This document shows positions 10,475 to 31,959 of a stretch of DNA of 64,000 bases, piece by piece. A program made the position numbers and the translations under genes. The notes under the pieces are model-generated. The model saw only the letters and a program-made list of their open reading frames with translations, had not been told where the DNA came from and ran no database searches. Origin of the DNA: Lama guanicoe (taxonomy: Eukaryota); contig MU054974.1 in the NCBI GenBank assembly GCA_013239625.1, positions 930,001 to 994,000 of the forward strand. The letters run 5' to 3'. The number at the start of each line of letters is the position of its first letter. Position 1 is the first letter of the stretch.

Positions 10475-10480
10475 TTTATT
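10475..10480 (-). terminator. SEMA4D: Probable polyadenylation signal of the SEMA4D alternative (secreted) isoform
   Basis: TTTATT on + (AATAAA on -), about 1.46 kb downstream of the alternative stop, followed on - by GU-rich sequence. Confidence 0.6.
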
Positions 10481-11098
10481 TTTTTCCAACAATTCAGAGA
10501 ATCAGAAGTCAACCTCGTAACCACATTCCCCACCCGCGCACGGCCCGTCGATGTGACGGTGACCTAGTGTTTCAGTGCTGTGGGTCGTGGAGAAGGGGGG
10601 CTGACAGCAGCAGGAAAGGGCCCAGCTCAGTGCAGCTCGCTCAGCAGCAGTGGTGGCTGGAGCCACGTGCGCACAGGAGTCACGGCGAGAGCTGAGGGAG
10701 GTTTACCAAAAACTATGTCCCTGGCTGTGATGCTCTGTGGGCCAGATCAGCATCTGTTGGCAAGACGGGCGGCGCCTGGGCAGGAGGGGAGAGGGGTAAG
10801 GCGGGGTGGGCCGCCAGGGCGACCTGAACCCGAAAGCCAGCCATCCTGAGAGCCTTGCTCACATCGGATCCTGGAGGTGACTGGCCGGAAGTGTGTGCTA
10901 CTCCGTAGGAAGGTGCCCAGCTTCAGAACAACGGGGTCTGGAAAGAGGCTGCGTCATGAGGCTGAGGAGACCGGGCTCACAGGAGAAGCAGCGCTTTGTT
11001 AACAGAAGTTTTGGTTTTACAGTAGACTGCATTCCGGTAAAAGCTGTCATTCCACAAGCAGATGTCTGCGAGCTGCTGGGCGGAGCAGCGTTAGGCCT

Positions 11099-11253
11099 GG
11101 GCCCTCGTGCTCACACGTGCACACGCTTGCACACACACACACACACGGGCCCTCGTGCTCACACGTGCACACGCTTGCACACACACACACACGGGCCCTC
11201 GTGCTCACACGTGCACACGCTTGCGCGCGCGCGCACACACACACACACACACA
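11099..11253. repeat. Three copies of a 46-48 bp unit, each ending in (CA)n
   Basis: gggccctcgtgctcacacgtgcacacgcttg(ca)n starting at 11099, 11147 and 11193. Confidence 0.92.
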
Positions 11254-11938
11254 CGGTCCCGGCTGCAGTGTGGACCGGAGGCCCCGCAGCTCAGCCTCGT
11301 GGGCTCGCCCCGCTGTGAGAGGAGGGGCCGCGGCCGGGGACACGTGCACAGCTGGCCTGCTGGCTCTTCCCTGCAGGCGAGCCTGGTGCCCAGGCTGCAG
11401 CCGCGAGGACAGGTGCACGCTCGGACCTCTAGCGGGCAGGCCAGAACTCGACGGTCTCCCCACGTCCGTGTCAGCTTCTGGGTTTGCACCTTCGCCCTCA
11501 AGGTTTAAGAGAAATTCCTGTCATTTGGAGCCTCACCTCCCCTGTCGCTGGGCGGCGTTTCTTGGAGTCACATGGCTAAGTGAAGGTGGCGAGAAGCAGC
11601 CGTCAGGAGGGGCCACCACCGCCGGCTGCTCCGGGGGGCGGCCCGCTCGTGTGGTCACATGGCGTGACCTGAGGAGGAGACAGGAGCCATCACACACGCT
11701 ACTGTCTGAAGCAGTTTCTGTTTGTAGCTTGTTAGTCGCCTTGGTTTCCTGCGTCTGCCAGACAGGCCCTCCTGTCCCCTCTAAGCACCTAAATAAGAAG
11801 GAGACATTCTGGCAACTGTCGCGGGTCCACTCGGGGCTCCAAGTTCTCTGCGCAGCCCGACGGCAGTGTCCGGCAGGCGGGAGGCTTCGCCAGGGTGCAT
11901 GGCAGCGTGGGCTTGGGGTGGGCACTGCCTCCTGGCGC

Positions 11939-11965
11939 TCAGAAGGCGTCCTGGCCGCAGCTTTC
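11939..11965 (-). CDS. SEMA4D: SEMA4D alternative isoform terminal coding exon (ESCGQDAF*)
   Basis: - strand gttgttctttcag|GAA AGC TGC GGC CAG GAC GCC TTC TGA, phase 0. Resembles the recalled human isoform-2 end ESCSKDTL. Confidence 0.85.
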   Translation of the reverse strand, partial: ESCGQDAF

Positions 11966-12280
11966 CTGAAAGAACAACGTGGTCTTTTAGGTCCTGGAGC
12001 ATCAGGCGGGCCCGAGTCCCTGTCCTGTGTGCTCCCCGTGGGGCCTAGGGTCTGAGCTCTGTCTGGGGTTAGGGTGGCCGTGGGGGCATCTTGCCAGAAC
12101 CAGCTGGTCCTGCCTGACTTGGGAAGTCCTGATTCCCCTCCCGGGATTGGCCCTGGGTGGGAGGGGTGCGGGTTTCAGAAAGCAGAAGTGCTCGATGGGC
12201 CTGGGGAGGCACCAGCAGGACGGGCCCCGAGATGGGTGGCCGTCCGGCCAGACCCCGCCCCCCCGGGCCCGGCCACGTAC

Positions 12281-12378
12281 CCACGCCTTCCTCCAGCTCT
12301 GCACCATGCGATCATGCTCCCCGACCACGGCCCTCCAGGCGGCGAGCTCTCTGGTCCACCTCTCTTGGTGGGTCGCCT
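12281..12378 (-). CDS. SEMA4D: SEMA4D alternative isoform exon C (Trp-rich helix)
   Basis: tcttgcag| ... TGG|gtacgt, 98 nt, phase 1 to 0. Encodes EATHQERWTRELAAWRAVVGEHDRMVQSWRKAW. Confidence 0.88.
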
Positions 12379-15229
12379 CTGCAAGACAGAGCAGGGCTCA
12401 GGTCTCAGTTCCGCTGGCCTTGGTGGCCCTCGGGTGCCCACCGTGCTGCACCTCTGCTGGGCTGAGCTGGGCCTTGGCAGCCGAGTGGGCTCAGGGAAGG
12501 TGTTTACCCCTCGGGCCTCGCCTTCCTGGCTGCGGGGGCTTCCACAGAGAGCCTCCTCCACCCAGCCTTTCCTGGGCCACCGGCACCCCGGGCGGCCGCT
12601 CCCCAGGGCCCCGCTGGCTCTATCCTCCGTATCTCAGGGGCGTTTCCATCCAGCCTGGAGGGGACTCGACTCACTTCCCACGCCTCGAGGGGCAATGCAG
12701 ACACCCTGGGGTTCGGGGTGGGCAGGGGCTGGGAGCTGAGGCCCGGAAAGCAGCTCGGTAACCAGGGCTAGCGTCTTGTTACATCACGTGCTGCTCGCTC
12801 CGCGCAGCGGCCGTGTGAGTCTGGTCCTGAGGTTTGAGGAGGAGCGACTGCAGGGCTGTCCGGTTGGCACCAGCCTGACGGCCACGTGCTCTCTTTGTAA
12901 ACACAGAAATGCGCGGCAGCGTCGCTTGGGACCGCAGCTCACGTCGCTGGTCTCAGAAATGGGTCCCAGGAACCTGAGCCCTTCAGACGGGAAGCAGGAC
13001 TCACACCCGGGGCAGAACTGAGCGGGCCCAGCGCTCATGGTACCCACACAGCCAGCCTTCAGCCTGCGCCGCCCCCCAGGGTGACAGCAGGGAGCTGGCG
13101 GGGCTCTGGAGCAGGGCCCTTGGTGGGCTGAGCTCCATGGGGCCCTGCAGGGGCTCCTGACTCAGGACGCGCAGGGCTGGGGCAGTCTGGGTCCCCGGAG
13201 GCTCGTTTTATTGTCTAACACGTCCTCCAGCACCGCCTGTGCCTTCGCAAACATGGTTGGAGGCGGGGGGGAGGATGGAAAATACTGAGGCGCCTTAACT
13301 GCTTGCGTCTTTTAGCCCCTTTCCTGGCTTCTGTGTCTCCTGTCTGCACGGTGCCTTGGGTGGACCCTTGCCTGCCATCAAGTCAAGCCCTGTGCTTGAG
13401 CGCCGGTGGGCTGCGTGACCTTGGGCGAGTCCCTTAACCTTCATCGTCAGTGCGTGGGGTTCAAGTTAGATGACAGTTTAGCTCAAACTGGCTCGTTACT
13501 TCTCTGGCTGTTACTACTTCGCTGTTTGCTGACAGCACCGTTCACTTGGCTTCTGGGTAAGACGTCACAATTTCTAAGTCTCACATGGGTATTCATTTTA
13601 TCCTGACAGCAACAGGCAAGGGCACTTTATAGAAATGAAAGAAATGGGGGTTCTGGGTGGGAGTAAGTATTTGAAATTTCCTTTTCTCTGAAACCCCCAC
13701 TTACAGGACAAGGGAGCTTTTAAAATGTGTACTTTGTGTATAAACTCTTGAAAATGGACAGAGGATAGGGGAGGAAGCAGTGGAAGCTGGAAGCTGAGAA
13801 GCGGGGGGGACCAGTGGAAACCGTAGCAGCAGAAGCAGCAGGCCCGGAAGGCAGAGCCCTGCCCGGCAGCGGGGGGCAGGTGGGGGGCCTCTCGGGGGCC
13901 CTTGGGAGCCCGGCGCTGCCTCAGCCTGGCGTGCCTGCTGCCCTGGGCGTGGGCTGCCGCCCGAGGCCCTGCACACGGCAGCTTCTCTGCTAGCGCGTCC
14001 GGGAATCACGAGGTGCCCCCGGAACGGGCTCCCAGGTCATCAGATGCTGCCCAAGACGACACCTGGGCTGGGAGGGGCATCCCGGGAGGGTGCCCTGTGC
14101 CCGTCTCTTAAATGTACCCGGGCAGTCGCTCCCGAGACTTATGAGCGAGACTAAGGCAAAACCACCAAAAAGGGGCAACTGGGAGGGAAAAGAAAACGGG
14201 GAAGTGCTCAGTGATCTCAGAGCAGAGCGGATGGCCACACGCAGGACAAGAGGAGGATGGGGTCCTGACAGAACAGAACGAAAACCCCTGCCTAGTGAAA
14301 ATGTGAGGCTGGGGTGGGGACTCACTACAGGGGGCGCAGCGGAGGGAGGGCAGCTAACGGGTGGACGGGCCGGGAGAGGAGACGGACGGGGGGCCAGCCC
14401 AGGAGCCCAGCACCCGGGAAGGTAGTTCCAGAAAGAGTAGCAAATGACGTAAGTGCGGCACGTCCGAGAGTTGCAGGCCGGGGGCTGTGAAACGCGGCGG
14501 GCCCCGCCCGAGAGGTCTGCGCCCGTGTGGGGCTCAGAGAGACAGTGGTCACGCGGGGTCACAGGCAGCCTCCGGGGCCGGAGGGCGGAGCCAGCCGCAC
14601 GCGCTGGGAGTATCTTCAGGCCAGAACTGTCTACGCGGCTGAAGATGGAGGAAAGACGTAGGCTCTCGGGACACGGACTCCCCCAGATGCTATGTCTGCG
14701 TATGGCCGGAGGCACCCCACGAAACAGCGGAGGAGGAAATCAAAAAAGGAAGGGACACCGGGAACTAGGTCACGAGATCCAGCGTCAGAGGAGCGGACTC
14801 TCCAGCCCCAGCGGGAAGGGCCAGTCCAAGGAGGACGAGCGTTTGGGGGGGGTGACAACGGGGACACCAGGGTGCCTGCAGGGGTCGGGCACTTAGCCGC
14901 AGAGCCCGGTGTGGAATTCCTGGTAACTGAGCAAGCGAGGCGGCACGGGGGTTCCCTACATGTGGAGGGATGGGTTCCAGGCTTCAGCCATCCCCGTGAT
15001 GTAACAGACTCTCCTCCTGTGGGGACGGGGGATTAGCAGCCGCTGTGCATGCATGCGTGTGCGTTCACACGTGTGTGCGTTCACAAGTGCATGTGCACCG
15101 GGGAGGCAGGCAGCGAGAAGCTAACTCATTCGTCTCAGCGAACACCAGCAGGTCATCCCTACTGAAGTGTCAGCGCGCGGGGCCGCTGCCAGAGATGGGG
15201 GGGAGGCACTGAGGTGGCGGGGGGCTCAC

Positions 15230-15439
15230 CGTGTCCCGTCACGGCGATGTGCACCCGGGAGGTCTGGCTCCCCGCCGCGGACAGCGCGGAGCAGCGGTAC
15301 TCGGCGCTCTCCCGGACGGCGTCCCGCAGCCAGCTGAGCACGAGGGCCCGGCCGTCGGGCAGTGCGTGGGTCTGCGTGGGGATGCACGCCTCCAGCACAC
15401 GCCCGTTCTTCTCCCAGAGGAAGTGGACGTCCGCGGGAC
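15230..15439 (-). CDS. SEMA4D: SEMA4D alternative isoform exon B (Ig-like domain strands C-G)
   Basis: gtgcccccag| ... CACG|gtgagc, 210 nt, phase 1-1. Encodes GPADVHFLWEKNGRVLEACIPTQTHALPDGRALVLSWLRDAVRESAEYRCSALSAAGSQTSRVHIAVTGH, with Ig WxxNG and YxC motifs. Confidence 0.92.
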
Positions 15440-18400
15440 CTGGGGGCACACAGACCATCTTCAGCCCCGGGACCCCCACCTAGGACCGAGGGGAGCCACC
15501 CTGGCATGGGGCGGGGGGCAGAGCCACCCAGATTAGGCGCCTCGTCCCAGCAGGGCCCAAAGTGACTGGGTGGGTGGCTTTCCGGTAAGTCTCTGTCCTT
15601 TCCCTGGAGGGGGCCTGGGAGGGGTTCCCCACTGTGGTCCCCGGTGGCCCTGGGAGAAAAGGGTGCGAACACCTCAGTGCCCTGTGCCCCACGGCTCCCT
15701 GCTCCTTGGCCTCACTTGGGCGCCTTTTTCAAAGCATACTTGCGTGGCCATGTCCCCAGGACGTGCCGGGCCCCTGGGCGCACCCTTTTCCTCCTCCCCA
15801 GGCTGTGCGCCCCGTGGAGTGCCTGGTGGCCGGGCTCTGGGGCAGAGGGTCTGGGCCAGGAGCTTAGCTGCCCACCTGGCCCTGCTGCCACCGCTTTGAG
15901 CCTAGAGCTCTGTCTGCACAGGGCCACTCGCTCTCCCTGGGGCACCAAGAGGCCAGGGCAAGCCTGCCCCGCTGGCCGGGTCACGTGGCCAGGGAGCAGG
16001 ACTGCCACCAGGAGCCCCAGGCTGGGCCGGGGGGCGGGCGCATGGCGCCAGGAAGGGCTGGCGGCCTGTCTTTTCCACATAAGGACTTGGAGGAGAACGG
16101 ACCCGAGGGAAGGGCCCGGCAGAAGCCCTCTCCCAAAGCACAGCGGGGTCCTGTGCCGGAGCCCCGCCCGGGCCCCATGTTCATCTCAGAGTGGCTGACA
16201 ATGGGGGCCGTGGAGCCCAGTGCACGGAGAGCCTGGAGCAGGACTGGGCTCTGGTCCCAAGGCCAGAAGTGGCCTCAGCGAGCACCTCCTTGGTGGGGCC
16301 CCTTCCCCAACCCTAGAGGGTGGCCAGGTGAGTCTGGGGTGTCAGGCTCCACGCCGGGTCCCCGGGCTGTGCTGAGACGGGCCCGACTCCCGTCCTGACT
16401 TAGGAGCGAACCAGGTGGGTCACCTCCACCTTGACCTGCTTACATACCGGCTTCCACTAAAGGGCTGAAGACAGGACCCAGCTGGCACCACTAGGCTCCT
16501 CCCTGGGGTGTGTGCAGACCCCCGGTGAGCTGAGCTAGGACCGAGCAAAGGCCGGGCTGGGCCCTAGGGCGGAGCAGCAGCCCGGCCAGCCCCGGACGCC
16601 CTGGGGTCAGAGCCAGGCACGAGGGGATGCAGGCCCTCCCCACTGTGTGCGCGGTGTGGGGCGCGCAGCCCCTCTGTGCCCGCTGCTCCCAGTCGCGGAC
16701 AGGGTGGTGCTGGGGCCAGGCCCTGACAGCCCACGCTGCTGCTCCCCCCACACCTGTGCGGGGCGGGCACCCCAACAGTGTGGACTGGGGGGCCCTCTGG
16801 CCGCCTTGCCCAGGGACCCAGCTCCCTGACAAACGCCCGCCGTTCCGAGTGGACTGCCCCACGCGGGGGGAGGCCGACCTCGACCAGAGCAGCCCTGCCT
16901 GATGGCCGCGTGCCTGAGACTCAGCTTTCAGGAGTAGACTCCACCCCAGCCGCCCGCCAGCCGGGGACTGACACACGACGGAGTTTCGTGCGGGATGGTC
17001 GGTGGACTCGATCTGTCCAGCTGGGGTTCACTGAGCAGGCAAAGCGAACGGTAGACGTGAAGGATTAAACAGCACAGAGAGCAGCTGGCGCCCGGGTGTG
17101 CGCGCGTCGGGGGGCACGTGCGGGCGGGGAGCTGGGTGAGGGGCCGGGTGGTGGGCAGAGGGGCTCTGCCACGTGCTGGGCTTTTTACAGGGGGGAGAGG
17201 CTTCTAGTTTAGATGACTTCTGGATTCCCAGCCGGTCAGGTCCCTGCGCGGCCAGTCTGGCACCGTTCATCTTTGCCTGGTCCCTTTGTCAGTGACCGAC
17301 CACGTTCAGGACCGGCAGAGAACCTTCCTCCCAAAGGAGAGTCAGACCCTTGAAGTGGACAATCCCAGGAATGGGTCCTGAGGCCACGAGCGAGACCCAC
17401 AGAGGAGCCACTGAAGTCGTTTGTTAGTGGGAAGTTGGGGAGCATCCCACAAGGGGTCCCCTGAATGATGTGGTGCCCCCCACCGCCTGGGTGCCTGTCA
17501 GTCGGGCAGAGGTATCTCCTCCCGTGAACTGCATGCACCTGGTGACACCGCGTGCTGTTCAGTCACTCCCTGGCCGATGGGCATCTCGGTGGCGTCTGAC
17601 TTTGAAAGCTGACACTCGTGAGGCGTGATTGGTCACGGACGTGAGACCTGTCTCTGAGCAGCCACTGAGGTCAGTTCTGGAAAGGCCCCGGCACCCCCCT
17701 TGTCCCCCGGCCCTGTCCAGGGGTGACGTGCACAGAGACCCACCCCCCAGGCTGGGGGGCCGCAGTCGCAGGAGCGTCTGGAAGGTTCTCCTGATCCTCG
17801 CCGGGACGAGACCCGGATGGCCTGAGCTGGGGAGGGCTCGTCGCCCCGAACCACACGGCCAGGACCCCTCAGGAGCAAAGCTCCTCAGACCCCCGGTTCC
17901 CAGGGTCTGCACCGCCATCACGAGGACCGTGTCAGGCACTGTTAAATGTGCCGTAAATGTGTATTTAACCGCAGTAAAACGTTAGAAATGTGAAAGTACT
18001 TACGTTCTGTTTCTTTTCTAAAACTATCCAACTCATTCTGAATGCAGAGGTTAGAGAGAGAGGGAAAGTGAAAGTTAAAACCGGTCAGCAGGGCTACCAC
18101 CCTGGACACTGGGGATCCCGGGCAGCAGGGGCCTGGGCCCATCCCTCGCAGCTGCCCCGGGCTGGCCTCTGCAGGGCGGGGCGGCTGGGGTCTCGGGGCC
18201 CAGCCCCCACCTTGGGACTCCATCCTGCCCCACCCACGGCCCCACACGGTCTGAGGAGACCCCCGGGGTGGGGTGTGACAAAACCAGAACCCCTCTGAGC
18301 AATGGCCTCTCCCCGAGGGAAGCCGACCCGTCCTAGGGGCAGAGGGCCTGACAGCCCGCAGCTGGAGGGGACCGATGGGGTGCACCCGAGCCCTCAGCCC

Positions 18401-19343
18401 ACATCCTGACCGGTGCCCCCGCTGCCGTCTGTGCAGCTCCAGGCAGGTGAGCCTTCCTCCAGGCACCCTCCTGCGTGTGGTCAATTCTGACTGACCCCAG
18501 AGCTGGCGGCCCCAGGGCCAGCCCCTCCCCCGCCCCATGCCCAGGGTCCTGCCAGCTACTCCAGTGCACCTCTGGGGGGCTGTTCTCTGAGCACCCGAGG
18601 CTGTAGGCACCAAGGATGCTCACTGCGGATCCCCGGGACCGGGCACTCCCCTGCGCGGCTGAGACCCCACAACCGTATGGGAATCAAGAGGGCCTGGCCG
18701 GCCCGGAGGGCAAGGGGTCTCCCAGGTCTGCCGCCCCGGTGCCATCGGCTCTCCCCCATGTCACCTCTCAGGCCCTCACTCAGGTGCTGGGGCCCCGTGG
18801 TCAGCTGAAGAGTCACCCCCAAATGTCCAAGTCCTCATCCCTAGGCCCTTGTGTGGCTAAAGGCGCTTCCAGACCACAGTGGGCAGTGCAGGGAGGTGAC
18901 CTGGTCCGCCCCGCCCCGACGCGGAGGGGTGTCCCGACTCCTCCTGGAAAACTCACAAGTCGGCTCTCCGCCGTGGCTCAGCCCTGGCCTCCCAGGGGTC
19001 CTGACGCGCACACTGGCAGCAGCGGTCACTGCAGGAGGCCCAGGTCTGCCCTCTGACTCCAGCCGCTCACAGAGCTCTGCTTTCTAACGTCTTGGTTAAG
19101 ACATGAGCGGCCATCCAGAACCTGAGCATCCAATACCACCTACGTGTAGGGGATCCACCCTCAGCTTTAAAGGTGACACAGGTCTCACCGCGACACGGAA
19201 GAGGGAGGGCCCTTAGAGACCGCACTTTGGTTAAGAAGTCACATACGTCTCTTTCTGCGCTACGTACGTGCGTGTGCAGACACATGACATGGGTGGCACG
19301 TCCGCGTGCACGGCCGCACCGTCCTTCATTGGCCGTTACCTGC

Positions 19344-20090
19344 CAGGCGCGCCACGCCCCCTTTCCCTGCGCTTTGCACGCCGCAGGTGCACTTTCTACA
19401 GATGGAAGGTTTGTGGCCACGCAGCGCCAGGCCAGTCTGCCAGCACCGTTTTCCAAACAGCGTCTCTTCACTTCCTGCCTCTATCACATTTTGATGATTC
19501 TTACAGTATTTCAGACTTTTTCATTATTGCGGTGACTGTGATTGGAGACCTTTGCTGTTAGCACTTCAGCCTGCTAAAAGCTCAGACGACGATCGGCATG
19601 TTTTAGTGGTGGTTTGGGTTTTTTTGGGGGGGGGATTGGGTTTATTTATTTATTTTTAATTTTTTTTTTTAGTGGAGGTACTGGGGATTGAACCCAGGAC
19701 CTTGTGCGTGCTAAACACGTGTTCTACCACTGAGCTACACCCTCCCTGCAAACATTCGGGGGTTTCTGTGTTAATTTTTTGCTGTTTTTGTTTGTTTTGG
19801 GGGGGTAATTGGGTTTATTTTTATTATTTTTTAAAATTTAACTGGAGGGACTGGGATCGAACCCATGACCTCCTGCACGCTAAGCACACACTACCACTGA
19901 GCTGTACCTTCGCCCCTTTAGTGGTATTTCCTAACTAAGGTACGTACCCTATGTTTTCAGATGTGACACTTGCACACGTCACAGACTGCAGCATAGCACG
20001 ACCTAACTTCCACGTGCACCGGGAAACCGGAGCGTCCGTGTGCCTCTCTGTTGTGCCTGGACCTGCACTCAGCACCTCCGAGGTCTGCTC
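19344..20090 (+). mobile_element. Internally deleted Tigger1-like (TcMar) DNA transposon interrupted by SINEs
   Basis: Recognisable Tigger1 5' part (acagatggaaggtttgtggc...cacattttg...tatttcagactttttcattatt) and 3' part (taaggtacgtac...tgcaccgggaaacc...ctccgaggtctgc), compared with the consensus from memory. Confidence 0.75.
19611..19916 (-). mobile_element. Head-to-tail pair of tRNA-derived SINEs
   Basis: Two units (about 19619-19746 and 19786-19916), each with an AGCTCAGTGGTAG A-box, a GGGTTCRATCCC B-box and an A-rich tail. Confidence 0.88.
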
Positions 20091-22051
20091 AGGACCCCTT
20101 TGCTCTGCTTGTCCTGACTCTCCACTGTGCACGTACGTCGCTCGCAAATGGAAGACAGCCAGCAGTCGGGACGGCCACTCCGGGGCCCGGAGTCCGTCCT
20201 CCCCGCGCGCAAGCCTCGGCGCCTGTGAACGGAAGCGTGGCCCCAAGGCGCGGTGCGCGGAGTGCTCTGGACCAAAAACACACACACACACACGTGCACA
20301 CAAGAACACAGGCATACCGGCGCACACAGGTACACACATGCGTGCAGTTATGTCAGCACACAAAGCGCACATGTACCCATGTTAACGGGGGTACATGCAG
20401 ACACAGAGGCGCGCGCGCACACGCTCCACCAGGAAGATCTGGAGATGGAGAAGCCCCTCGGGGTCCCTGCGCGCCGAGGCCAGGCCCGCTGTGAGACACT
20501 GGCCCGGCTTTAGCGCAGCCAGAGCTTGAGCCACCGTGACCGGTCCCATGAACCCAGCTCTACAGAGACACACAGGCCGAGCCACGCAGGGTAGACAGGG
20601 AGCAAGCCAGACAGGGAGGTGCCTGCAGGCAGAGGCAGGAACCAACCTCCTGCAGAGCCGCAGCCTGACCCGAAAGTTGACCTTCAGTTCTGGTGCCGTC
20701 CGGGGCTTGGGGGAGGGGACGGCCGGAGACGCCGCCTTGGTAAACACTGTGCCCCCCAACACCACGATGCACAGTGACCAGCACTGGCTGGTGGGCTGGG
20801 TTTAGGGGAGAGGGCAGCACCTGCCTAGATCCGGACGTGTCCCTGGGGACGGCCAACCCAGGGGCCTGCGGCAGGACGGGCCTGGGGCAGGGCCCGCATG
20901 GCGCCTCGGACAGAAGGGACGTGCTCTCGTCCCCTGTCCCTTGACAGCAGGTGGGAAGAGCATGTTTCCCGAGGGCAGGCGTGAAACCGCCCCATCGAGG
21001 GCTGGTCCCTGCGAGCCCGTCAGCGGGGTCCCCGAGGACCTGCGTCCACCAGTAAGGGGCCCTGGTGAACCCAGCACCGAGCCTCCCCGCCTTCCCAGTG
21101 CCAAGGAGGTCCCCAGGCGTGGCAGTGGAGGACGCTGCAGCCGCAGGACAGGCCTGGCGGGTGGAGCACATACCTCAGTGCCCGCCCTGAGGGCCTGAGG
21201 CGGCCCAGGTGACCCGGGGCCACACAGCCGCCCTCACACGTCTGTCTGCACACGTCCCACTCGCAGCACCTGCCCATCGCCTGGGGCCCATGCAGAGCCC
21301 AGGGGACGGAGGCCCATGAGCCGACTCCACAGGGGACACGCAGCGGCGTGACACTCGCGGCTCCTCCCAGCTTGCCCCAGAGCTCCCAGAGGGGAAGAGA
21401 CCTATCTGTTCTCCCTCCTCCTTGACCCCCTCCCCGCTCTGAGCAGAGGACGAGCCCCAGGCCTGGGACGGGCTGTGCGCTTTCTCTCGCAGCTACCGAC
21501 GAGCGAGAAGCCGGCACCCGGGGACCAGGGCCGCCCGCGCTGCCCAAAGCCCGGGACACATTCAGAACGCGGGTTTGGCCGCCGTCCCATCCCAGTGTAT
21601 CCAACACAGAGCAAACCCCCCGTGCCCGAGGGGGCAGGCTAGACTCTCGGTCTTTTCTGTGTTTAAACATCCTGAAACAAGTCATTCAAACAATTCCCAC
21701 TTGGCTGGCTCTGGAGTTAGTTTTTGAAATCTCCAGATGCACACAGACCCACACACATCAAACCCAAACGGTCGGCCGACACAGAAGCGCCCCCCGGGCC
21801 GGCCGCGGCCCGGCAGCTGGTGCTGGCGGACAGTCTAAGGCACACGGCCGCGCCCGTGTTCACGTCACGAGGGGAGAGCTGAGTAATTGCAACGAAACTA
21901 CGTTCCCTGGAGCCTCAGAGGAAAACGCTGGTTGGGCCCTGCCGCCCCCAGCCCCAGCCTCGGGCTGACGGTTCAGTGTCGCCGGGGGCGCCCGCACTCG
22001 TGGAGGGCGCGCCCACCCCCACCCCCCGCCCCGCACAAGTGCCCCGCTCAC

Positions 22052-22261
22052 CTGTGGCCTGGCAGAAGAGGTGGAAGGTCCCCAGGGCGTGCACGTGCTG
22101 GGCCTGGTCGCTGAGGAAGGGCGGCAGCAAGGTGACCCGCGGGCGGCTGTCGGGCCCCGCGCCCGAGGCCGGCCAGGGGCTTCGGGGAGAGGAAGGTGAG
22201 TCGGGGCCCAGACAGGACAGGGAAGAGGACCCCGGAGGGGGGAAGGGCAGAGGAGATGAGG
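22052..22261 (-). CDS. SEMA4D: SEMA4D alternative isoform exon A (Pro/Ser linker plus Ig strands A-B)
   Basis: Long polypyrimidine tract ending ctctgtctcgcag| ... ACAG|gtgagc, 210 nt, phase 1-1. Encodes ASSPLPFPPPGSSSLSCLGP...RVTLLPPFLSDQAQHVHALGTFHLFCQAT. Confidence 0.9.
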
Positions 22262-22438
22262 CTGCGAGACAGAGGACAGAAAAGAGAGAGGGCTCTGAGA
22301 GGGGCGTCGTCAGGGACACACCGCACGCCGGGGGCGGGGGGGCGGAGCACAGGAGAGAAAGGGGCCCCTGTCCAGGCCGCGCGGCGGGGCGGGGAGCCAC
22401 AGCAAGCCACAGGCCGCGCCAAGGATGTAAGCGTCTCG

Positions 22439-22586
22439 TTTATTTGGTTACTTTCCAAATGTATACAATTCAAAGTAGAAAAATAAAAACAAAGTAAATC
22501 TTACAAAACACAAATGTTTACACCAAAACGGTCGAATCCATCATGCTGGAAGATGACACTGTCCACACACACACACTCAGTTTATT
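22439..22586 (-). terminator. SEMA4D: Tandem AATAAA poly(A) signals of canonical SEMA4D mRNA (22581-22586 and 22439-22444)
   Basis: Two TTTATT on + about 1.13 and 1.27 kb downstream of the stop, flanking a tract that is U-rich on the - strand. Confidence 0.7.
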
Positions 22587-23715
22587 GCTCTTTGCCACGG
22601 AAAAGAAAGGCTCCTCTTGCGGGCGTCCGGAAAGCAGGAGGTGGAGTGTCACACCGGTGGCGGGAGACTGCCGCCCGCTTGCACCTCTAAAGACGGGGCC
22701 GGGCTGGGCCGGTCTGCGCGGTGACCTCTGGGGGGGGCCTGTGGTCACTGGCCCGGCCCCCCGCTCTCTTCCAGTCGTGGTCAGCTCGTCACGCCAAGCG
22801 GAGAGTCTGGGCGGCCGGGGGCACGAGGCGGAAGCGAAAGGAAGGGAGACGTTCAGACGACTGAGACATCCCGGCGAATGTCCGTCTGTCTGGACAGGAG
22901 GTTCTGACCGGCGGCCGTGGGCATCGGACTGTGAAAACGCGCGTCCCCTCGGCTCTGGGCCAGCCTGGCTCTCCCAGGCCCCGTCCCTCCCTTGACACCC
23001 TGCCTGGCGCTGCGTCCTCCACAACCTTCTCCTCCTCCAAAGACTTAAAACAAGAGAAATAAAGGAACAGAAAGAGAATCTCTGACAACGGTGCTTCCCT
23101 CAAGAATGAAATTAAAAAAAACAAAACAAAAAGGATGTTCAAGAGACGGTTTTGTCTACACTTCTAAAAGCAGAAAAGAACGCATTTAAGCAAAAGCAAG
23201 TTTATCCCTGAGAATCTCAAGCAACGTAAGCCATACCTTTCCCTACCAGACGGCAGAACCGAGATGTGCATCTCCTAAATATTAAACACATCTGCTTCAG
23301 TGATCAAAAAAAAAAAGACCTAACATACCAACACAATTAAAGCCAAATCCTAAAAAAGTAATTACGTGGGGGAAAAACGGTCCGTGCCAACCTGGAAAAC
23401 AGGCGATAAGTTACCAATCTGATAAACGAAGAACGTCATTTCCAATCTGGAAGTAAGCTATCCTGCAGTGGCCGCCGTGAGGAGGGCCGCCCTCCCGCCA
23501 CGGCGCGGGCTCGTCCCCAAGCGCTCCGACCCACCGAGGGAGGCCGCACGCGATGGTCGGCGTTTTCCGAAAGGACAAAGAGAAACCAAGTCACAAGTGC
23601 GACCCAAGAGAAGAAGACACAGAAGACGGAGGTCTGCAGACGACGCCTACCTACGAGGCACTGGGCGGGGGACGGAACTGGCCACACGGGGACCTCCCTG
23701 CGCGCGCCGGGCGCC

Positions 23716-24644
23716 TCAGTCCCCGTCCGCGTCCGAGTCGGCGAACTGCAGCTCGCACTTGACGTCGAACGGCTTGTCCCGGCCCGGGAGCTCGTCCATC
23801 CTCTGCGAGTCCTCCCTGTCGGTGGGCACCCTGCTGGCCATGGTGTCCTGCTCCGTCTCGTAGCCGGTGTCCAGGGCCGGCTTGGGCTGCCCTCCGTTCT
23901 GCTGGGAGAAGCTGCCCTGCTCCACCAGCGTCTCCTTCCCGCTCTGCTCGCAGTCGGAGAAGTCCAGCGCGGGCTTCTTCTTCCCGAGGAACACGGCCGA
24001 GCGGAACTTCAGGCACTGCCCGGGCAGGTAGCCCTTGTAGCAGTTGTAGGTCAGGAGGCAGAGGAACAGGACGAAGAAGAGGAGGCAGAGGGACATGAAG
24101 AGGCGGTTGTCACTAGATTTGAGATACATTGTCTTCTCCGAGTGGACCTGGGGGACCGTGTTGATGACGATCTTTGGTTCACAGGACGTGCTGGTGGGCG
24201 CTGCGGGGTGGGACGGGGGGCTGACGGCACTGGGCGTGCTGACCCGCACAGCTGGGGTCTGGGGAGGGGAGCCTTGGGTGGGCCCCAGCGACATTTTGGG
24301 GGTGATCCTGCCACCTTCTGTCCGTGTGGCCGGCGGGGCAGAGGCCGCCGGGGTCCGCGGGACCACCTTGACCTCCAGGACGTGCTTGGCCACCACCTGC
24401 AAGATGGTCTTGTTTCTGACCCTCTCCTCCGACAGGCACTGGTACACCCCACTGTCTCCTTCCGACAGGTCGAAGATGAGCAAGTTCTTCCTGCCCACCA
24501 GGCTGTACTTGGGGCTCTCGACCTTGAGCACGCTGTCCCGGAACTTCCACACCACCCGGGCCAGGTTGGACTTTTGGGAGCACTTGAGTTCTGCTGTGCC
24601 ACCACGCTTGAAAAAATGCTGCCGGTAACTTTCTTTAACTTTAT
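23716..24644 (-). CDS. SEMA4D: SEMA4D canonical terminal exon: Ig domain, stalk, transmembrane helix, cytoplasmic tail
   Basis: gatgttccag| DKVKESYRQHFFKRGGTAELKC...GVYQC...LFMSLCLLFFVLFLCLLTY...DTGYETEQD...FADSDADGD*; 929 nt. Confidence 0.98.
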
Positions 24645-25443
24645 CTGGAACATCAAAATAAACGTGCACAGTGTCAACAGCCCTGCTCGGTACTTGCTTC
24701 AAAAACAGGTCAACACGCACAAGAGGACACAAGAGTTTCACCCAGTGGAGCAACATGGAATCTTCCAGAACAGCTAAGGAGGTAAAGACATGCGTGACAG
24801 AAAAGCAAAGATGAGCAGCCCTTGGGGACAGAGATCGAAGCCAACTCCGAGCAGGAGAAATCCCGTTTCGCACCCCGGTTCCCCAGGAGAAAACGCGCCA
24901 GGCCGGGGAGGCCGGGCAGTAGCGCCGAGTCAAACCCAACCGGCTTCTGCTGGGGCCGCTGGGCACGCCAGCTGGTCCGAGCACCTCCACGCCCGCCTCC
25001 TGAACTGGTCTTAACGGGGCCAGGGTCGGGAGGGCAGGAGCCCAGCGCACGCCTGCCCTCGGCTGGGACAGGCCTGCCCTCCCGGGCAGAGCTGTGCTCC
25101 CCCGAGGGGCGCGAGGACGGATCTCTCAGGGGTCCCCCCTCCTGTAACCAGGGCCACAGGTTTTGTTTAGGGAGCCCCAAGCTAAGCAGGAGAGAGACGG
25201 ATGCATCTCAGGAGCAGGTGTCACGGTCTGGGATAGAGAGTGAGTCCCTGCGTGGCTTCCACATCCTGTTCTGCGATAAACAGGACAGAGAAATGCCACG
25301 GGGTCAGCCACGAGATCCTTGACCTCCGTTCCGAGTAGAGAAAGGAAAATGAAATGGGCAAAATGCCACACCACGGAAGCACTGTGAAATGGTTAGGGGA
25401 CCCGGCCGGTCCCGAAGGGAACGCAGCAGGGTGAGCCACTTAC

Positions 25444-25487
25444 CGGGGCAAGCGGATGTGTCCCCGCTCATTTCCTGAATCAGCCCC
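25444..25487 (-). CDS. SEMA4D: SEMA4D coding exon 13 (end of PSI domain; branch point for the two 3' ends)
   Basis: ttttgcag| ... CCGG|gtaagt, 44 nt, (R)[14 protein letters not shown]. Confidence 0.96.
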
Positions 25488-25572
25488 CTGCAAAACAACC
25501 GGGCACAGGTTACCCGCAGGCATGTGCGGCGCAGCGTGGGGCGGGGGCACCGACGGGCGGCGGGGCCGGTAC

Positions 25573-25745
25573 CTGCTGAGGCTGTCGGCCTGGTGCAGGG
25601 CGACGCAGGCGGCCGCGGCCGGGCTCCAGGCGCAGTAGGGGTCCCGGGCCAGCACACAGTCCTCGCAGGTGCCGTGCTGTCCGCAGAAGGCCACGGGGGC
25701 CTGCACCACGCCCGAGTTGGAACCGGCGTAGATGAACCTCCTGCC
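25573..25745 (-). CDS. SEMA4D: SEMA4D coding exon 12 (PSI domain)
   Basis: cccacag| ... CAG|gtaccg, 173 nt, [40 protein letters not shown]. Confidence 0.97.
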
Positions 25746-28134
25746 CTGTGGGTGTGGAACAGATGAGAACGGTGGGCACGGGGTGAAGCCACCAGCGTGA
25801 CGGGGCGACCGGTGCTGCTCTAGCTCGGGGGCGGAGGGGGATGACGAAGCACCCCCCGAGGTTCTGGAGGAGAAGGTGGAGCAAGGCCCGGCTGGATCCA
25901 AGACTAATCTGAATCACAGCATCGTAATGATACAGGCTAACTCAGGGCACCCTGGGCTGTGGTGCGAGTCCCGCCCTCCCTGGCCCAAGTGCCCCATCAC
26001 CCTACCCACCAGCAGGGCGCTGCGCCCCTCCTCCGCGGGCAGGGGCTGCTCAGGCCCGCGGTGCACGGGAGGCCCCCACCAGCCTGGCACTCCCGGCCGC
26101 ACTCCCGGCCTCACCACGGGCCAGGGCCAGAGGACACCACCTGCGAACCACGCCTCGCGCCTGCCACATGCGAGCACCAGTACACAGAAGGCCCGTGCCC
26201 GTGTCTGAACCCGGCGGGGCCGCGGTGCAGGAGGCGCGCCCACGTTTACGGGAGATGAATGCTGCTGGGGAGATGAACAGCCACGCTCCAAGCAGGGAGC
26301 AAAAAGCAGGCTCCTTCTGGAACTCCAGGCCCTCGGGCCACCGCCGCCAGCGCCCACGGCACTGGCAGGCGGCTGTGCACGCAGGCAGGGCTGGACTGAG
26401 GGCCCCACGGAGCGCGCCTAGGCCCGCGGCACCGCCGGGGTGGGCAGCCCAGGCCCCAGGAGATTTCCGTCTCCTCTGCTGGCGAGCCTGTCTCACTCTG
26501 AAGTTCCAGATGGGCCTTCAGGTTAACGTCAAGAGACTCCCCGGTCTACACAGAGCTCAGTGTTTTCCACTCGGATGAGATGCAGCCTCTGTCCCTGGAG
26601 AATGCGATCTGAATCGACTTCAGAGTCCGGCTGGAGCTCAGAGTCCCTGCTGTTACCCCAGAGCCCCTGGCTTGCGATGCCTCCCTCCCCGGGGGTCACA
26701 GACCCACCCTGCGGAGGGACAGTCAAGGGAGGGCAGCCCCTGCAGTGAACGGACAAGCGGCTGAGAGCCAGGCCCAGGGCCGGCCTGTCCACAGCAGCAG
26801 ATGAGGGACAGGGGCAGATGAGGGCGCGCGAGCCCCATATTCACACAGGAGGGATAATGTCCCAGGTCACAGCCAGGATTACGTGGCTCAGAGAGGTGAG
26901 GGAGCACCTCCCGGGGTGACAGGCTGAGCGGGGCTCCCGGAGGGACCCTAGTATGGGCCCGGACATTCATGCAGAGCCCAGCAGGGGGCCCGGGCTGCCT
27001 GGGGAGCCCACGGGCACCTCCCCCGGGGAGGAGGCCCTCCCCAGCCCGGCTCCTGCGCCCAGCAGTGCGGGCCGAGCCCCTGTGACGCAGAGCCGACGGC
27101 GCCTCTCCGACTCCCACGGACGGGGGAGGGAAGGGGATGGGAAAGCCGCTTGGATCCTGCAGCAGTGCCCGCTGCGGGCCAGGCCACGGGCGGACGTGAC
27201 GAGTCAGCGGGCACGGGGCCAGGTGTCTGTGGAGCCTCAAGGTCACCCACAAATTAGTGGTGGCGACAGTAGGAGCTGAACGTGGCCCCCAGACTCTTCA
27301 GCCTCCCCCTCGAGAAGCTGGGGCTTAGCTCCCCATCCCCTGGGGAACTGGGCCCACCGAACACAGGGCGCAGGGACAGCACGGAAAAAGAAATCAGTAA
27401 CTCTGAGAAGTCACGTCGAGGCCACGTCCCTGAGACAGTGGTCATCTCCCCAAACACTCACCCCTAACCTACACACAACACCAGAGGCGCCCAAACTGAA
27501 GGGTGTCCGCAGAACGCGACCTGTTCTCTCCTGAGTGTCACAGCCACCCAGACGGGCGGATGGGGGGCCGTGCGGGCTGGAGGGGACTGAGGAGAGGAGC
27601 TGGAGGACGCATGGGGCCCTGCAGCCTGAAGGCAGGTGGCGGGACAGGGGTTCCGGGGCCTGGAGGGGAGTGGGGGTGCGGTGCCAGCGGACCTCCTCGG
27701 GTTGGCAGGCACGCACTGGACTCCCTGCACCATCGTCCCAACTCTTCTGAGAGAAAACCACCCGGCCGGGCGCCATGAGAGATCTGTTGGGAACGCGCGT
27801 TCCCCAGCCCTCTCCCTGTGGGCGCCGCGTGTGTCTCCACCCTCCAGCTGACTACATGCCCTGCTGGAGCCCTGGGCCCACACTGTCTCATTTCCATCCC
27901 TGCATACACAGGCACGTGATCGTGGGGGGACGTGGCTGGAGCTGGAGGAGCACCTGCCGAAGCAACTGTTCCCTCCCCTTTGCTGCACAGGCTGCCCCTT
28001 ACCATCCAAGAGTGTCCTTGGGGACCGCAGACGCAGCCGGCTCTGTGGCCCAGGGCACACCTGCCACGTACACACAGAGACCCGGGAGCAGGACTCAGAG
28101 ACGTCACACGGCACTAGTCACAACACCCCAGGGG

Positions 28135-28550
28135 TGGAGGCAACCCAAGCGTCCCTCAGTGGGTGAGTAAACAAGATGTGGTGTGTGCACATGATGGAAT
28201 ATTATTCAGCCCCGAAAAGGAAAGAAATCCCATCAATTGCAATGGCATGGATGAACCTTTAAGACAATATGCTGGAGAAAACAAGCCAGTCCAAAAGGGC
28301 AAACATTGTAGGATTCCACTGAAGTGAGGTTCTTAGTCAAACACTCAGAGATGGAAAGCAGAACGGGGCTGGGGAACGGGAGGAAGGAGGAGTCAGTGTT
28401 CAACGGGGACAGGGCTTCAGTTTGGAAGGATGAAAAAGCTCTGGAGGTGGACGGCAATGATGGCCACACAGCGTGACTGCACTTGGCGCTGCTGAAGTGT
28501 ACACACAAAACAACCAAAATTTATCTGATGAGTATTTACCACACACAAAA
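28135..28550 (+). mobile_element. Old L1 (L1M) 3'-end fragment
   Basis: caacccaagcgtcc...atggaatattattcagcc...catggatgaacctt, typical of the L1 ORF2 end and 3'UTR. Confidence 0.75.
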
Positions 28551-30184
28551 AAACCCAAAAAAACAAAGTCACTTGTTAGGGGACAGGAGATAGTGACAAG
28601 GGGCAGTCCCCCTTTCTGGCTGCAGGGGGCTCTGTGCTGCCCACAGCTGCTCACCAGCCTTCCACACTGAGGCTCAGGCACGATGGGCCGAAGACTGCAG
28701 GCGGGGACAAGGGGCAGGGGGCCTTTTACCCAGAAGAGCCGCTTCCTGCTGCCCCGGCAGCACGGCCAGCAGCCCAGGGGAAGGTGCGGGGCCCCGTGGG
28801 TGCGCGACAAACTCTCAGGTGTCCCAGGTAACTGAGCATGCCCCAGTGCAGTGGGGACTCTTGCAGGGACAGGCCATTCATTCCCCGGGCGCCAGGCTTC
28901 CCCCAGCCACGTGACCGCATCCTGACCGCAGAGTGGGGGGCAGAGGGCTGACCTGTAAGAGCCCCCCAGGAGATCCTGCCCTCCTTCCTCCTCCCCCCAT
29001 CCTCCAACGAGATGAGAGCCCATGTGCCCTGGGCCCTGGACTCGGGTTCAGGATGGCAGGGCACAGGTCCGTGAACTGCACCGTGGCGCAGAGCAGGGCC
29101 CTGTTCTCACCGCACGTCCACCCGCGCTCGGGGTCCGGCCTCAGTTCTGATGAGTATGTGTGCATTTGGAGGCCTCAAGGGTCCTCGTCCCAGGCTGGCT
29201 GAGGCACCTGGGGGACCTGCCAGCAGGCGGACGGTCTCCTGGGTGTCCTTGGCTCAACAAGGACGTGGGGTCGGTGGGACCCCAGAAAGGGGGGCCGAAG
29301 CACCCCCCCGAGAGGCACGGATGCCACGTCTGGTAGCCTAACTCCATTGACCTCGTCCTTCCTCCCTCTCAGAACGGGAAGGAGGGAGCTCGCCGTGCAG
29401 TGGCCAAGGGGGGAGGTGGCCCTGTGACAGGCGTCTGAAACCAGAGCCACCTCCTCAAGCTCAGGACAAAAGACCCACATGTGATGTTTGCCAACACGTG
29501 GCGACCGAGAAGTCGCCTTTTTTCTTTTCATTCCCGCCTGGCTACCAGGGGCGCCCACCTGCTGCCCGTGGCCCAGGGCTGAGGGAGCCGTGCGCCTGGG
29601 CCCCACAAGCCGGGTGGAGCCAGGGCAGCGAGGATGCTCCGAGGGGCCACAGGAACAACCTCTTTCCAACATGAAGAGAGGAGGCCCGGCGTGTCACGGG
29701 TCAAACCGGAAATTCCCAGCAACAGGTGACACCACACGAAGCAGGGACAGCCTGGCCTGGTGCCCCTGAGCAAAGCTTTTCAAACAGGGTGCAGGTGGGG
29801 AGACTGAGCAGTGGGGGGCCTGCAGCGCAGGAGAACGTGACGCATGGCCGAGCTTCCCTGGGACTGCCAGGCCCCAGAGCCCGTCAGCCCAGGGACACTC
29901 AAGTCCCCACGGGGGGACCCTACACGCGTAAGGGAGGTCCTTGACCTGACAGCCCAGGGGCCGCAGTGTGGGGAGTCACAGGGCAGGGCCGGGACCAGGC
30001 TGGGACCCTCCCATCTGCTGTACCTCACTGTATGGATAGAGACCGAGGTAGGACTGGCCTGCCCAGGCTCCCGGTCACACATTGTGGAGCCTGGATTTGG
30101 ATCCGGCCCGCACTCTGCCCGTCACTGCTCCATCCCAGCTGTAAACCGGGTGGCATGTTTCCCAAAGGCCACTACAGATACACG

Positions 30185-30487
30185 ACAGGTGACAGCCTGT
30201 GGACGGCAAGGCAAACCCAGCCCGCTGGCTGTCTCTGCACAGCCCACCAGCTAACAAACGGGTTCACATTTTTAAATGGTTGAAGGAAAGTCAGAAGAAT
30301 GACATTCGGTGACACGTGAGAATTCCATGAACTGCAAAGCTCGGCGCCCGTGCATGAGGCTTTGCGGGAACGTAACAGGGCTCGCCAGCCTGCGGACCGC
30401 CCACGGCTGCTCCAGGCTGCAACAGCCCGGCCCCTGGGGCCTCAAGCAGTCAAGCTTGGTCCTTTAGAGAAAAGCCTGCAGCCCTGG
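30185..30487 (+). mobile_element. MER58B-like hAT-Charlie MITE
   Basis: cagcccaccagctaa...ttcacatttttaaatggttgaa...gtgacacgtga...cctttagagaaaagcctgcagccctg resembles the recalled MER58B consensus. Confidence 0.7.
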
Positions 30488-30849
30488 AGTAGGAGGAAGT
30501 GCCCTGCTGTTACTCAGAGGACGGTTTTCTGCAGTGATGAGGCGGTGCACAGGTGGCGCACCGGCCGGCGGGGGCTCGGCCTCACCGAGTCCCGGACACG
30601 AGGAAGTGCTTTCACAGGCCAGTGACGACGCGCCCCCAGCGCTGGTCCCGACAGCTCAGTGAGGCTCTGTCAGCTTTTAGGACAGTTGTCGTCCCTCCAC
30701 CCCAAGCCCCACAGCTCATGGAAGGACCTTCTGTAAGAGCCTGAAGGTCGGCTCATCTGGGCCAGACAGACGGCGCGGACTGCCCGGCCCAGCCCAGCCT
30801 GTGGCCGCTGAGACGCGGGGCCACCCACCCAGCTGCCCGGTCACTTTAC

Positions 30850-30965
30850 CTTCTTGGAGGACAGCAGCAGGGTCTGGACCGGCTCGAAGTCCTGGAAGAG
30901 CTGTGTCTCCTCGATGATGTGGACGTCATTCTCAAGGTTGATGGCTTTGTGCAGGGCGCCCCGGT
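30850..30965 (-). CDS. SEMA4D: SEMA4D coding exon 11
   Basis: ctcgcag| ... AAG|gtaaag, 116 nt, [39 protein letters not shown]. Confidence 0.97.
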
Positions 30966-31736: not shown

Positions 31737-31959
31737 CTGTGCTGACAAACATGACATCGTAGACGGTCCCGTCCAGGGCCTGGGTCCTGTCCACCACGAT
31801 CTGCGTGTAGTTCGCGTCGGTTTTGACCAGCCGGGGCCTGTTGTCTACCGGGGTCACGGAGTCGTCCATCAGCGGGTGATCTTTGACAAACTGCAGGGTC
31901 TTGTCTGGCAGGTTGAGCGAGCTGGAGAGGTTGGCCGCCCGCGCCTCCCGGTTGATACA
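31737..31959 (-). CDS. SEMA4D: SEMA4D coding exon 10
   Basis: cctgcag| ... CAG|gtgggt, 223 nt, [35 protein letters not shown]...DVMFVST. Confidence 0.96.

What the first reader, a model, noticed from the sequence alone, without database searches (positions are those of the whole stretch)
11939..22261. Intact four-exon cassette giving a genetically encoded, transmembrane-less SEMA4D (733 aa)
Seen in sequence: four exons (210, 210, 98 and 27 nt) with GT-AG sites and phases 1-1, 1-1, 1-0, 0-stop. They splice in frame onto the phase-1 donor of the PSI exon (25444) and bypass the canonical Ig/TM/cytoplasmic exon; total CDS is 2202 nt. Established: soluble SEMA4D is usually attributed to proteolytic shedding, and a similar human isoform 2 (former C9orf164) is annotated but little studied. 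Inference: keeping the frame, splice sites and key residues in a non-primate lineage with heavy GC drift implies purifying selection. This would be a real second secreted semaphorin, or a once-independent gene captured by SEMA4D.
Basis: partly seen in the sequence, partly recalled or inferred. Interest (0 to 1): 0.8.

Follow-up and report, generated by a model that had tools for sequence, protein, structure and literature searches.

The report
Conserved secreted SEMA4D splice-form tail exons
Four intact exons downstream of the usual last exon of SEMA4D give this (camelid-like) gene a membrane-anchor-free ending. Databases already list the same ending for more than a hundred vertebrates, and its tail module reaches back to lamprey, yet the papers I could search do not study it.

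Summary
On the minus strand the exons are 22261-22052, 15439-15230, 12378-12281 and 11965-11939, with AG/GT sites and phases 1-1, 1-1, 1-0 and 0-stop. They follow in frame from the phase-1 donor at 25444. The 17-exon chain, starting at ATG 44849, totals 2202 nt (733 aa plus stop).

The tail has an S/P-rich linker, one Ig-like domain split by the 6.6-kb intron, a long Trp-striped helix and a C-terminal ...WESC motif. It has no hydrophobic segment.

This is the orthologue of a widely annotated isoform. Camelus dromedarius "semaphorin-4D isoform X2" (733 aa) is 98% identical. Over 100 full-length Sema-PSI-tail proteins are listed for placentals, marsupials, birds, reptiles and frogs. Tail-bearing proteins also occur in teleosts and a lamprey.

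Spliced transcript contigs exist for bats, ruminants, cetaceans and equids. Conservation of this depth implies purifying selection, though dN/dS could not be run.

Nothing supports the "captured gene" idea.

The feature is already known at annotation level and functionally unstudied.

The parts
25573..44849 (-). SEMA4D coding exons 1-12 (signal peptide, Sema domain, most of PSI), shared by all isoforms. Start codon at 44849.
   Evidence: tblastn with Xenopus SEMA4D X2 (P0171) and splice-site/phase chaining. Exon 1 has a hydrophobic signal-like segment (KD 2.05).
25444..25487 (-). PSI mini-exon (exon 13, 44 nt). Its phase-1 donor CCG|GTAAGT is the branch point between the isoforms.
23716..24644 (-). 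Coding part of the canonical terminal exon (Ig, stalk, TM, cytoplasmic tail, stop), which the cassette bypasses.
   Evidence: Pfam ig, E 2.9e-6; TM segment KD 2.63
24313..24315 (-). Internal phase-1 donor in the stalk (GAA G|GTGGCA). It sits at the same '...TE|ASSP...' junction used by the ~840-aa Sema-PSI-Ig-stalk-tail isoforms annotated in birds, reptiles, frogs, marsupials and a squirrel.
   Evidence: Use in this species was not tested.
22052..22261 (-). Exon A (210 nt, phase 1-1): S/P-rich linker plus the first ~27 residues of the Ig-like domain (LLPPFLSDQ...FHLFCQAT).
   Evidence: 100% identical to camel X2
15230..15439 (-). Exon B (210 nt, phase 1-1): the rest of the Ig-like domain.
12281..12378 (-). 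Exon C (98 nt, phase 1-0): Trp-striped amphipathic helix.
11939..11965 (-). Exon D coding part (27 nt): ESCGQDAF plus TGA, carrying the near-invariant C-terminal Cys.
10475..11938 (-). Probable 3' UTR of the alternative transcript, up to the first minus-strand AATAAA at 10480.
   Evidence: signal scan only. RNA runs hold about 0.23 of the words of 10400-15500, but which part they hold was not resolved.

Best explanation
These are the alternative distal terminal exons of SEMA4D, the orthologue of the 'isoform 2 / X2' form annotated in many vertebrates.

If the phase-1 donor of the PSI mini-exon (25444) skips the canonical terminal exon and its poly(A) signals (22586, 22444), it joins exon A about 170 nt further on. 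It then joins exons B, C and D. The stop codon lies in the last exon, so nonsense-mediated decay is not expected.

The product keeps the signal peptide, Sema domain and PSI domain. It replaces the Ig, stalk, TM and cytoplasmic parts with an S/P-rich linker, a different Ig-like domain, a ~37-residue helix and a terminal ...WESC. The helix has a conserved Trp/His/Leu stripe on one face.

The exon anatomy, the frame, the lack of a TM segment and the deep conservation are shown. The rest is inferred: that the protein is secreted as a soluble plexin/CD72 ligand made without shedding, and that the helix and terminal Cys provide covalent dimerisation in place of the canonical membrane-proximal Cys.
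For: - Exons, sites, phases and the 2202-nt total are confirmed.
- Camelus dromedarius SEMA4D isoform X2 (P0280, 733 aa) is 98.0% identical over the Sema-PSI exons and 97.8% over the tail.
- 215 proteins of 402-1279 aa carry the tail. About 110 join PSI directly to it, in placentals, marsupials, birds, crocodilians, turtles, squamates and frogs.
- The junction is the same in Xenopus (...QCP|ASSPIPFPP) as here (...ACP|ASSPLPFPP).
- Tail homologues occur in teleosts, including a 741-aa Salarias SEMA4D, and in the lamprey Lethenteron.
- Spliced transcript contigs were found: a full-length 735-aa ORF on a 3385-nt contig (97% to Phyllostomus), exons A-D (99% to Rhinolophus), and exons B-D in ruminant-, cetacean- and equid-like contigs.
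- The window keeps all 15 invariant or near-invariant tail positions.
- The maximum 19-aa hydropathy is 0.4-0.7 in the tail, against 2.63 for the canonical TM.
- The AF2 model of a bat tail with a 28-sequence alignment has pLDDT 84 and shows a 7-strand sandwich plus one helix at residues 98-134.
- RNA-Seq runs from two studies hold about 0.23 of the words of 10400-15500.
Against:
- Many 'X2' models may have been propagated by homology-based annotation, so they are not independent proof of expression.
- No protein-level evidence was found.
- One paper states that both human isoforms are membrane-bound (PMC9148012). I could not check the human sequence here.
- Secretion, dimerisation through the terminal Cys and receptor binding are all inferred.
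Confidence: 0.85

Rival explanations
1. The four exons mainly belong to a separate transcription unit (a C9orf164-like gene) that makes a ~180-aa protein on its own. Under this reading, joining to SEMA4D is minor read-through splicing.
For: Stand-alone models exist. 183-aa 'semaphorin-4D isoform X6' models in Acomys and related rodents start ML(T/M)G and then run into exon A. 'Uncharacterized LOC' models exist in a snake, the electric eel and a lamprey.
Against: - These models have no signal peptide (maximum hydropathy 0.75), yet they encode a disulphide-bonded Ig domain.
- Their N-termini are not conserved between lineages.
- Exon A starts in phase 1, matching the PSI donor, in every lineage.
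- A full-length Sema-PSI-tail transcript contig exists (P0264).
- Relatives of the 'LOC' species carry the fused isoform.
Confidence: 0.07
2. The tail was once an independent gene that the SEMA4D locus captured. This is an origin story and is compatible with the best explanation for present-day function.
For: - The tail Ig shows no similarity to the canonical SEMA4D Ig.
- No other semaphorin appeared among 178 hits of the profile search.
- The lamprey homologue is annotated alone.
Against: - In teleosts, frogs, reptiles, birds and mammals the tail is already part of SEMA4D, in the same position.
- The stand-alone lamprey model has a non-conserved N-terminus that looks intronic.
Confidence: 0.15
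3. The exons are splicing noise or a decaying relic with no protein function.
For: No protein-level evidence exists, and no junction reads were obtained for this species.
Against: - The frame, the splice sites and 15 invariant residues are kept from lamprey or teleosts to mammals.
- Similarity ends at the exon borders in genomic ORF fragments of other species.
- The tail diverges only 1.1-2.2 times faster than the Sema-PSI core.
Confidence: 0.03

Closest known systems
Annotated 'semaphorin-4D isoform 2 / X2'
   Same: It has the same gene, the same PSI donor, the same '...CP|ASSP...' junction, the same four-exon tail and the same length. Identity to camel is 98%.
   Different: Nothing structural differs. 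This is the same isoform in another camelid-like genome. I did not check the human tail sequence itself here.
~840-aa SEMA4D isoforms (Sema-PSI-canonical Ig-stalk-tail) annotated in birds, reptiles, frogs, a caecilian, marsupials and Sciurus
   Same: They use the same exon A acceptor and the same tail. The window keeps the phase-1 stalk donor at 24315.
   Different: They retain the canonical Ig and part of the stalk. Use of this donor in this species is untested, and the donor matches only 6 of 9 consensus positions.
Soluble SEMA4D produced by proteolytic shedding
   Same: Both are TM-less ectodomains with the Sema-PSI receptor-binding part.
   Different: The shed form keeps the canonical Ig and stalk and needs a protease. 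The form described here is encoded directly and ends in a different Ig, a helix and a Cys.
Class 3 secreted semaphorins
   Same: The layout is similar: secreted Sema-PSI-Ig followed by a C-terminal tail with a dimerising Cys. For the present protein the dimerising role of the Cys is inferred.
   Different: This protein has no basic C-terminal domain. Its tail is a Trp-striped helix ending in ...WESCGQDAF, and by its Sema-PSI sequence it is SEMA4D.

Membership tests
SEMA4D isoform-2-type orthologue | The tail exons lie in the SEMA4D gene, on the same strand, downstream of the canonical terminal exon. | tested here: met
   Exon chain 44849..11939 on the minus strand. SECISBP2-like 3' exons lie convergent at 1636-8693.
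SEMA4D isoform-2-type orthologue | The phase-1 PSI donor joins exon A to give the ...CP|ASSP... junction. | tested here: inconclusive
   In silico the phases match, the split codon is GCC, and the camel X2 protein matches across the junction.
SEMA4D isoform-2-type orthologue | The tail has a linker, an Ig domain, a helix and the ...WESC motif, with the conserved residues. | tested here: met
   Alignments A1, A3 and A4. All 15 invariant or near-invariant positions are present.
SEMA4D isoform-2-type orthologue | No transmembrane segment after the signal peptide. | tested here: met
   Hydropathy was computed per exon for the window and on the whole camel, goat, bat, alligator and Xenopus proteins. 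The maximum is <=1.27 outside the signal peptide, against 2.63 for the canonical TM.
Class 3-type secreted semaphorin | A basic C-terminal domain after the Ig. | tested here: not met
   The C-terminus reads ...RKAWESCGQDAF, which is not basic. The Sema-PSI exons are SEMA4D orthologues.
Ig I-set (PF07679) versus C1-set | A significant match to one Ig subtype. | tested here: inconclusive
   Exon B alone matches Pfam I-set at E 0.13, below the cut-off. The profile search against PDB sequences finds titin and RPTP sigma/delta Ig (E 1e-12 to 1e-7). The best Foldseek hits are beta-2-microglobulin and MHC C1-type domains, with I-set domains at similar E. The Atlas neighbours are C1/C2-set, scoring below 0.9.
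Independent C9orf164-like gene | Its own conserved start codon and signal peptide upstream of exon A. | tested here: not met
   The N-termini of the stand-alone models are not conserved and not hydrophobic.

The most novel reading that the evidence does not exclude
SEMA4D has, since before the split of lampreys and jawed vertebrates or at least since the bony-vertebrate ancestor, encoded soluble forms by splicing. These are Sema-PSI-tail and Sema-PSI-Ig-stalk-tail. Both end in a private module of an Ig domain, a Trp-striped helix and a terminal Cys, which probably makes a covalent dimer. Part of what is measured as 'shed' soluble SEMA4D in blood and tissues could be this isoform.
Probability: 0.6. 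Interest if true: 0.6.

Novelty: already known. Interest (0 to 1): 0.4.

Why it matters
Soluble SEMA4D is a disease marker and an antibody-drug target, and the papers I could search attribute it to proteolytic shedding (PMC10935759, PMC9148012). One of them even states that both human isoforms are membrane-bound.

A splice form without a membrane anchor, kept across vertebrates, would be a second, transcriptionally regulated source of soluble ligand. It would differ in its C-terminus, its epitopes and possibly its oligomeric state.

For this genome the practical value is correct annotation. The exons are real and belong to SEMA4D.

Tried and rejected
  - A local tblastn used the whole window file only as the subject.
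- **Orthologous DNA:** No orthologous DNA, no dN/dS and no lamprey locus context could be obtained.
- **Joined model:** the joined 733-aa model was never sent to any tool. Exons were searched one by one by reference. Natural proteins (P0019, P0171, P0197, P0280) served as stand-ins for fold, profile and region searches.
- **Duplication idea rejected:** the tail Ig as a duplicate of the canonical Ig gave BLASTP E 7.7.
- **Literature:** searches for C9orf164, NM_001142287, Q92854-2, splice variant and short isoform found only gene lists and one passing remark.
  - I could not verify the link between C9orf164 and this tail.
  - I could not verify the human isoform-2 sequence.
- **Possibly human material:** short primate-like ORF fragments (P0014, P0017) that might be human were listed by the first search. 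They were not fetched as contigs or used further.
- **Earlier findings:** The search of earlier findings by words gave nothing relevant.
Full report
**Observation**

| Exon | Coordinates | Acceptor context | Donor or end |
|---|---|---|---|
| A | 22261-22052 | ...CTGTCTCGCAG\| | CAG\|GTGAGC |
| B | 15439-15230 | ...GTGCCCCCAG\| | ACG\|GTGAGC |
| C | 12378-12281 | ...CTGTCTTGCAG\| | TGG\|GTACGT |
| D | 11965-11939 | ...GTTCTTTCAG\| | ends in TGA |

- Between 15229 and 11966 only two 98-nt AG...GT intervals are open in the required frame. The one at 12378 is the one that matches orthologues.
- The PSI mini-exon (25487-25444) ends in a phase-1 donor, CCG|GTAAGT. The canonical terminal exon begins at 24644, also in phase 1.
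- The split codons are GCC, GGT and GAG.

Using Xenopus laevis SEMA4D isoform X2 (P0171) as a guide, I mapped all upstream exons by tblastn and a splice-site/phase search.
- There are 17 exons from ATG 44849. Every intron is GT-AG, and no exon has an in-frame stop.
- The canonical form is 2586 nt (861 aa).

I checked frames exon by exon. Natural orthologous proteins were used instead.

**What the tail is**

Exon A encodes an S/P-rich linker and the first strands of an Ig-like domain. Exon B encodes the rest of that domain. Exon C encodes a helix, and exon D encodes ESCGQDAF-stop.
- Pfam sees only a weak I-set match in exon B alone (E 0.13).
- A three-sequence profile of complete tails hits titin and RPTP sigma/delta Ig domains in the PDB sequence set (E 1e-12 to 1e-7).
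- AlphaFold2 on a Rhinolophus-like tail (P0019) with a 28-sequence vertebrate alignment gives pLDDT 84. The model has a seven-strand sandwich (residues 12-94) and one continuous helix (98-134).
- The best Foldseek hits are beta-2-microglobulin and MHC C1-type domains, with I-set domains at similar E-values. The Ig subtype is therefore unresolved.
- The tail Ig is unrelated in sequence to the canonical SEMA4D Ig.
- In the helix, the conserved residues W104, L108, W111, H118, W125, W129 and C132 (P0019 numbering) fall within about 120 degrees at 100 degrees per residue. That is one conserved face, as expected for packing against a partner. This is my arithmetic and my inference.
- Hydropathy shows no TM candidate in the tail: the maximum is 0.4-0.7 per window exon and <=1.06 in relatives' tails. 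The canonical TM scores 2.63 and the signal peptide 2.05.

**Relatives**

A word search with the ORF around exon B gave 22 short proteins.
- Some are genomic ORF fragments whose similarity stops at the exon B donor.
- Others are spliced fragments joining B-C-D (P0006, P0007, P0012, P0016) or A-B-C-D (P0019).

The profile search of 1.84 billion representatives gave 178 hits. The named ones include:
- Xenopus laevis SEMA4D X2 (729 aa)
- Salarias fasciatus Semaphorin 4D (741 aa)
- Arapaima, Electrophorus and Pleuronectes
- a snake and two birds
- the lamprey Lethenteron reissneri (LOC133346301, 256 aa)

No other semaphorin class appeared in that search.

Two region-restricted searches, using the Xenopus and alligator tails inside their full-length proteins, returned 38 and 215 proteins of 400-1280 aa.
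- "Semaphorin-4D isoform X2"-type proteins of about 725-740 aa occur in frogs, turtles, crocodilians, lizards, snakes, birds and marsupials.
- Among placentals they occur in ruminants, camels, cetaceans, suids, bats, a rhinoceros, carnivores, a sloth, rodents and a lemur.
- By motif census, about 110 join PSI directly to the tail. About 23 are ~840-aa forms that keep the canonical Ig and stalk and join at '...TE|ASSP...'.

The closest protein is Camelus dromedarius X2 (733 aa), with 98.0% identity over exons 2-13 and 97.8% over the tail. The window therefore comes from a camelid or something very close to one.

**Selection**

No orthologous DNA could be fetched (look-up of encoding contigs closed), so I could not compute dN/dS. 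The indirect evidence is strong. Identity to the window:

| Species | Tail | Sema-PSI |
|---|---|---|
| Goat | 86% | 90% |
| Rhinolophus | 82% | 89% |
| Degu | 75% | 86% |
| Tasmanian devil | 56% | 80% |
| Alligator | 55% | 75% |
| Xenopus | 48% | 70% |

- The tail diverges only about 1.1-2.2 times faster than one of the best-conserved parts of the protein.
- Unconstrained sequence would be unrecognisable at the marsupial, reptile, frog, fish and lamprey distances.
- All 15 invariant or near-invariant positions are present in the window: G27, P28, D30, W35, S62, W63, Y74, C76, G83, S87, W111, H118, W125, W129 and C132.

**Expression**

The evidence from other species is transcript contigs that can only come from spliced RNA:
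- P0264, a 735-aa full-length Sema-PSI-tail ORF on a 3385-nt contig, 97% identical to Phyllostomus X2. It contains ...ACP|ASSPMPFPP.
- P0019, 99% identical to Rhinolophus sinicus.
- P0006 (ruminant-like, 56 member sequences), P0007 (cetacean-like) and P0016 (equid).

For the window's own species, five RNA-Seq runs from two studies hold 0.22-0.23 of the sampled words of 10400-15500. That is compatible with exons B-D plus a 3' UTR. The key junction 25444->22261 is therefore not shown in this species.

**Mechanism**

This part is inferred from the anatomy.
- The canonical terminal exon has poly(A) signals at 22586 and 22444. Exon A begins about 170 nt beyond them.
- The choice is therefore between a proximal terminal exon and a distal four-exon terminal cluster.
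- The window also keeps an internal phase-1 donor in the stalk (GAA G|GTGGCA, last base 24315). It lies at the junction used by the ~840-aa forms of other vertebrates. This would turn the TM, the cytoplasmic tail, the 3' UTR and the poly(A) site into an intron.
- Both routes give a signal-peptide-bearing, TM-less protein ending in the same tail.
- The terminal Cys is near-invariant from fish to mammals and has no conserved intradomain partner in fish. An interchain disulphide is the simplest reading (inference).

**Rivals**
- **Separate gene.** The only support is heterogeneous stand-alone models that lack a signal peptide and lack conserved N-termini.
- **Capture of a once-independent gene.** This cannot be excluded for the period before bony vertebrates, but it has no positive evidence.
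- **Noise or relic.** The conservation contradicts this.

**Literature and novelty**
- The searchable papers attribute soluble SEMA4D to shedding (PMC10935759).
- One paper says both UniProt isoforms are membrane-bound (PMC9148012). That is at odds with the tail described here, if the human isoform 2 has this tail.
- C9orf164 occurs only in three gene lists.
- I could not verify the human isoform-2 sequence or its former C9orf164 name with these tools.
- The isoform is annotated in over 100 species, including the nearest relative, so I rate it already known. The gap is functional, not genomic.

Noticed in passing
window 24313-24315 (minus strand): An internal phase-1 donor (GAA G|GTGGCA) lies in the stalk-coding part of the canonical terminal exon. 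It sits at the '...TE|ASSP...' junction used by ~840-aa Sema-PSI-Ig-stalk-tail isoforms annotated in birds, reptiles, frogs, marsupials and a squirrel. Here it would give a second TM-less form of about 843 aa.
   Followed up: partly
window 1636-8693 (plus strand): Convergent 3' exons of a SECISBP2-like gene: an L7Ae-type segment at about 1636-1930 and a last coding exon ending at 8693. The alternative SEMA4D 3' end (stop at 11939, first AATAAA at 10480) approaches it tail to tail, so the two 3' UTRs may overlap in antisense.
   Followed up: no
P0020, P0023, P0033 (rodent proteins): 183-215-aa 'semaphorin-4D isoform X6'-type models start ML(T/M)G and then continue with exon A. This suggests an internal start exon or promoter in rodents, or an annotation artefact. 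They have no signal peptide.
   Followed up: partly
P0168 (Scortum barcoo, 1185 aa): This gene model runs from the canonical TM and cytoplasmic tail straight into the tail exons. It shows that teleosts have the same genomic order (canonical exon, then tail exons). The fusion itself is probably a prediction artefact.
   Followed up: no
window 11100-11320; 19640-19940; 5243-5277: A (CA/TG)n-type microsatellite lies just downstream of exon D's probable UTR. A-rich, tRNA-derived SINE-like copies lie in the A-B intron. A 35-base N run was left untouched.
   Followed up: no
tail Cys in exon B (EAC), window ~15370: A Cys in the Ig domain (LE.C) is present in tetrapods but absent in teleosts and lamprey, whereas the terminal Cys is near-invariant. 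The pairing of these extra cysteines is unknown.
   Followed up: no
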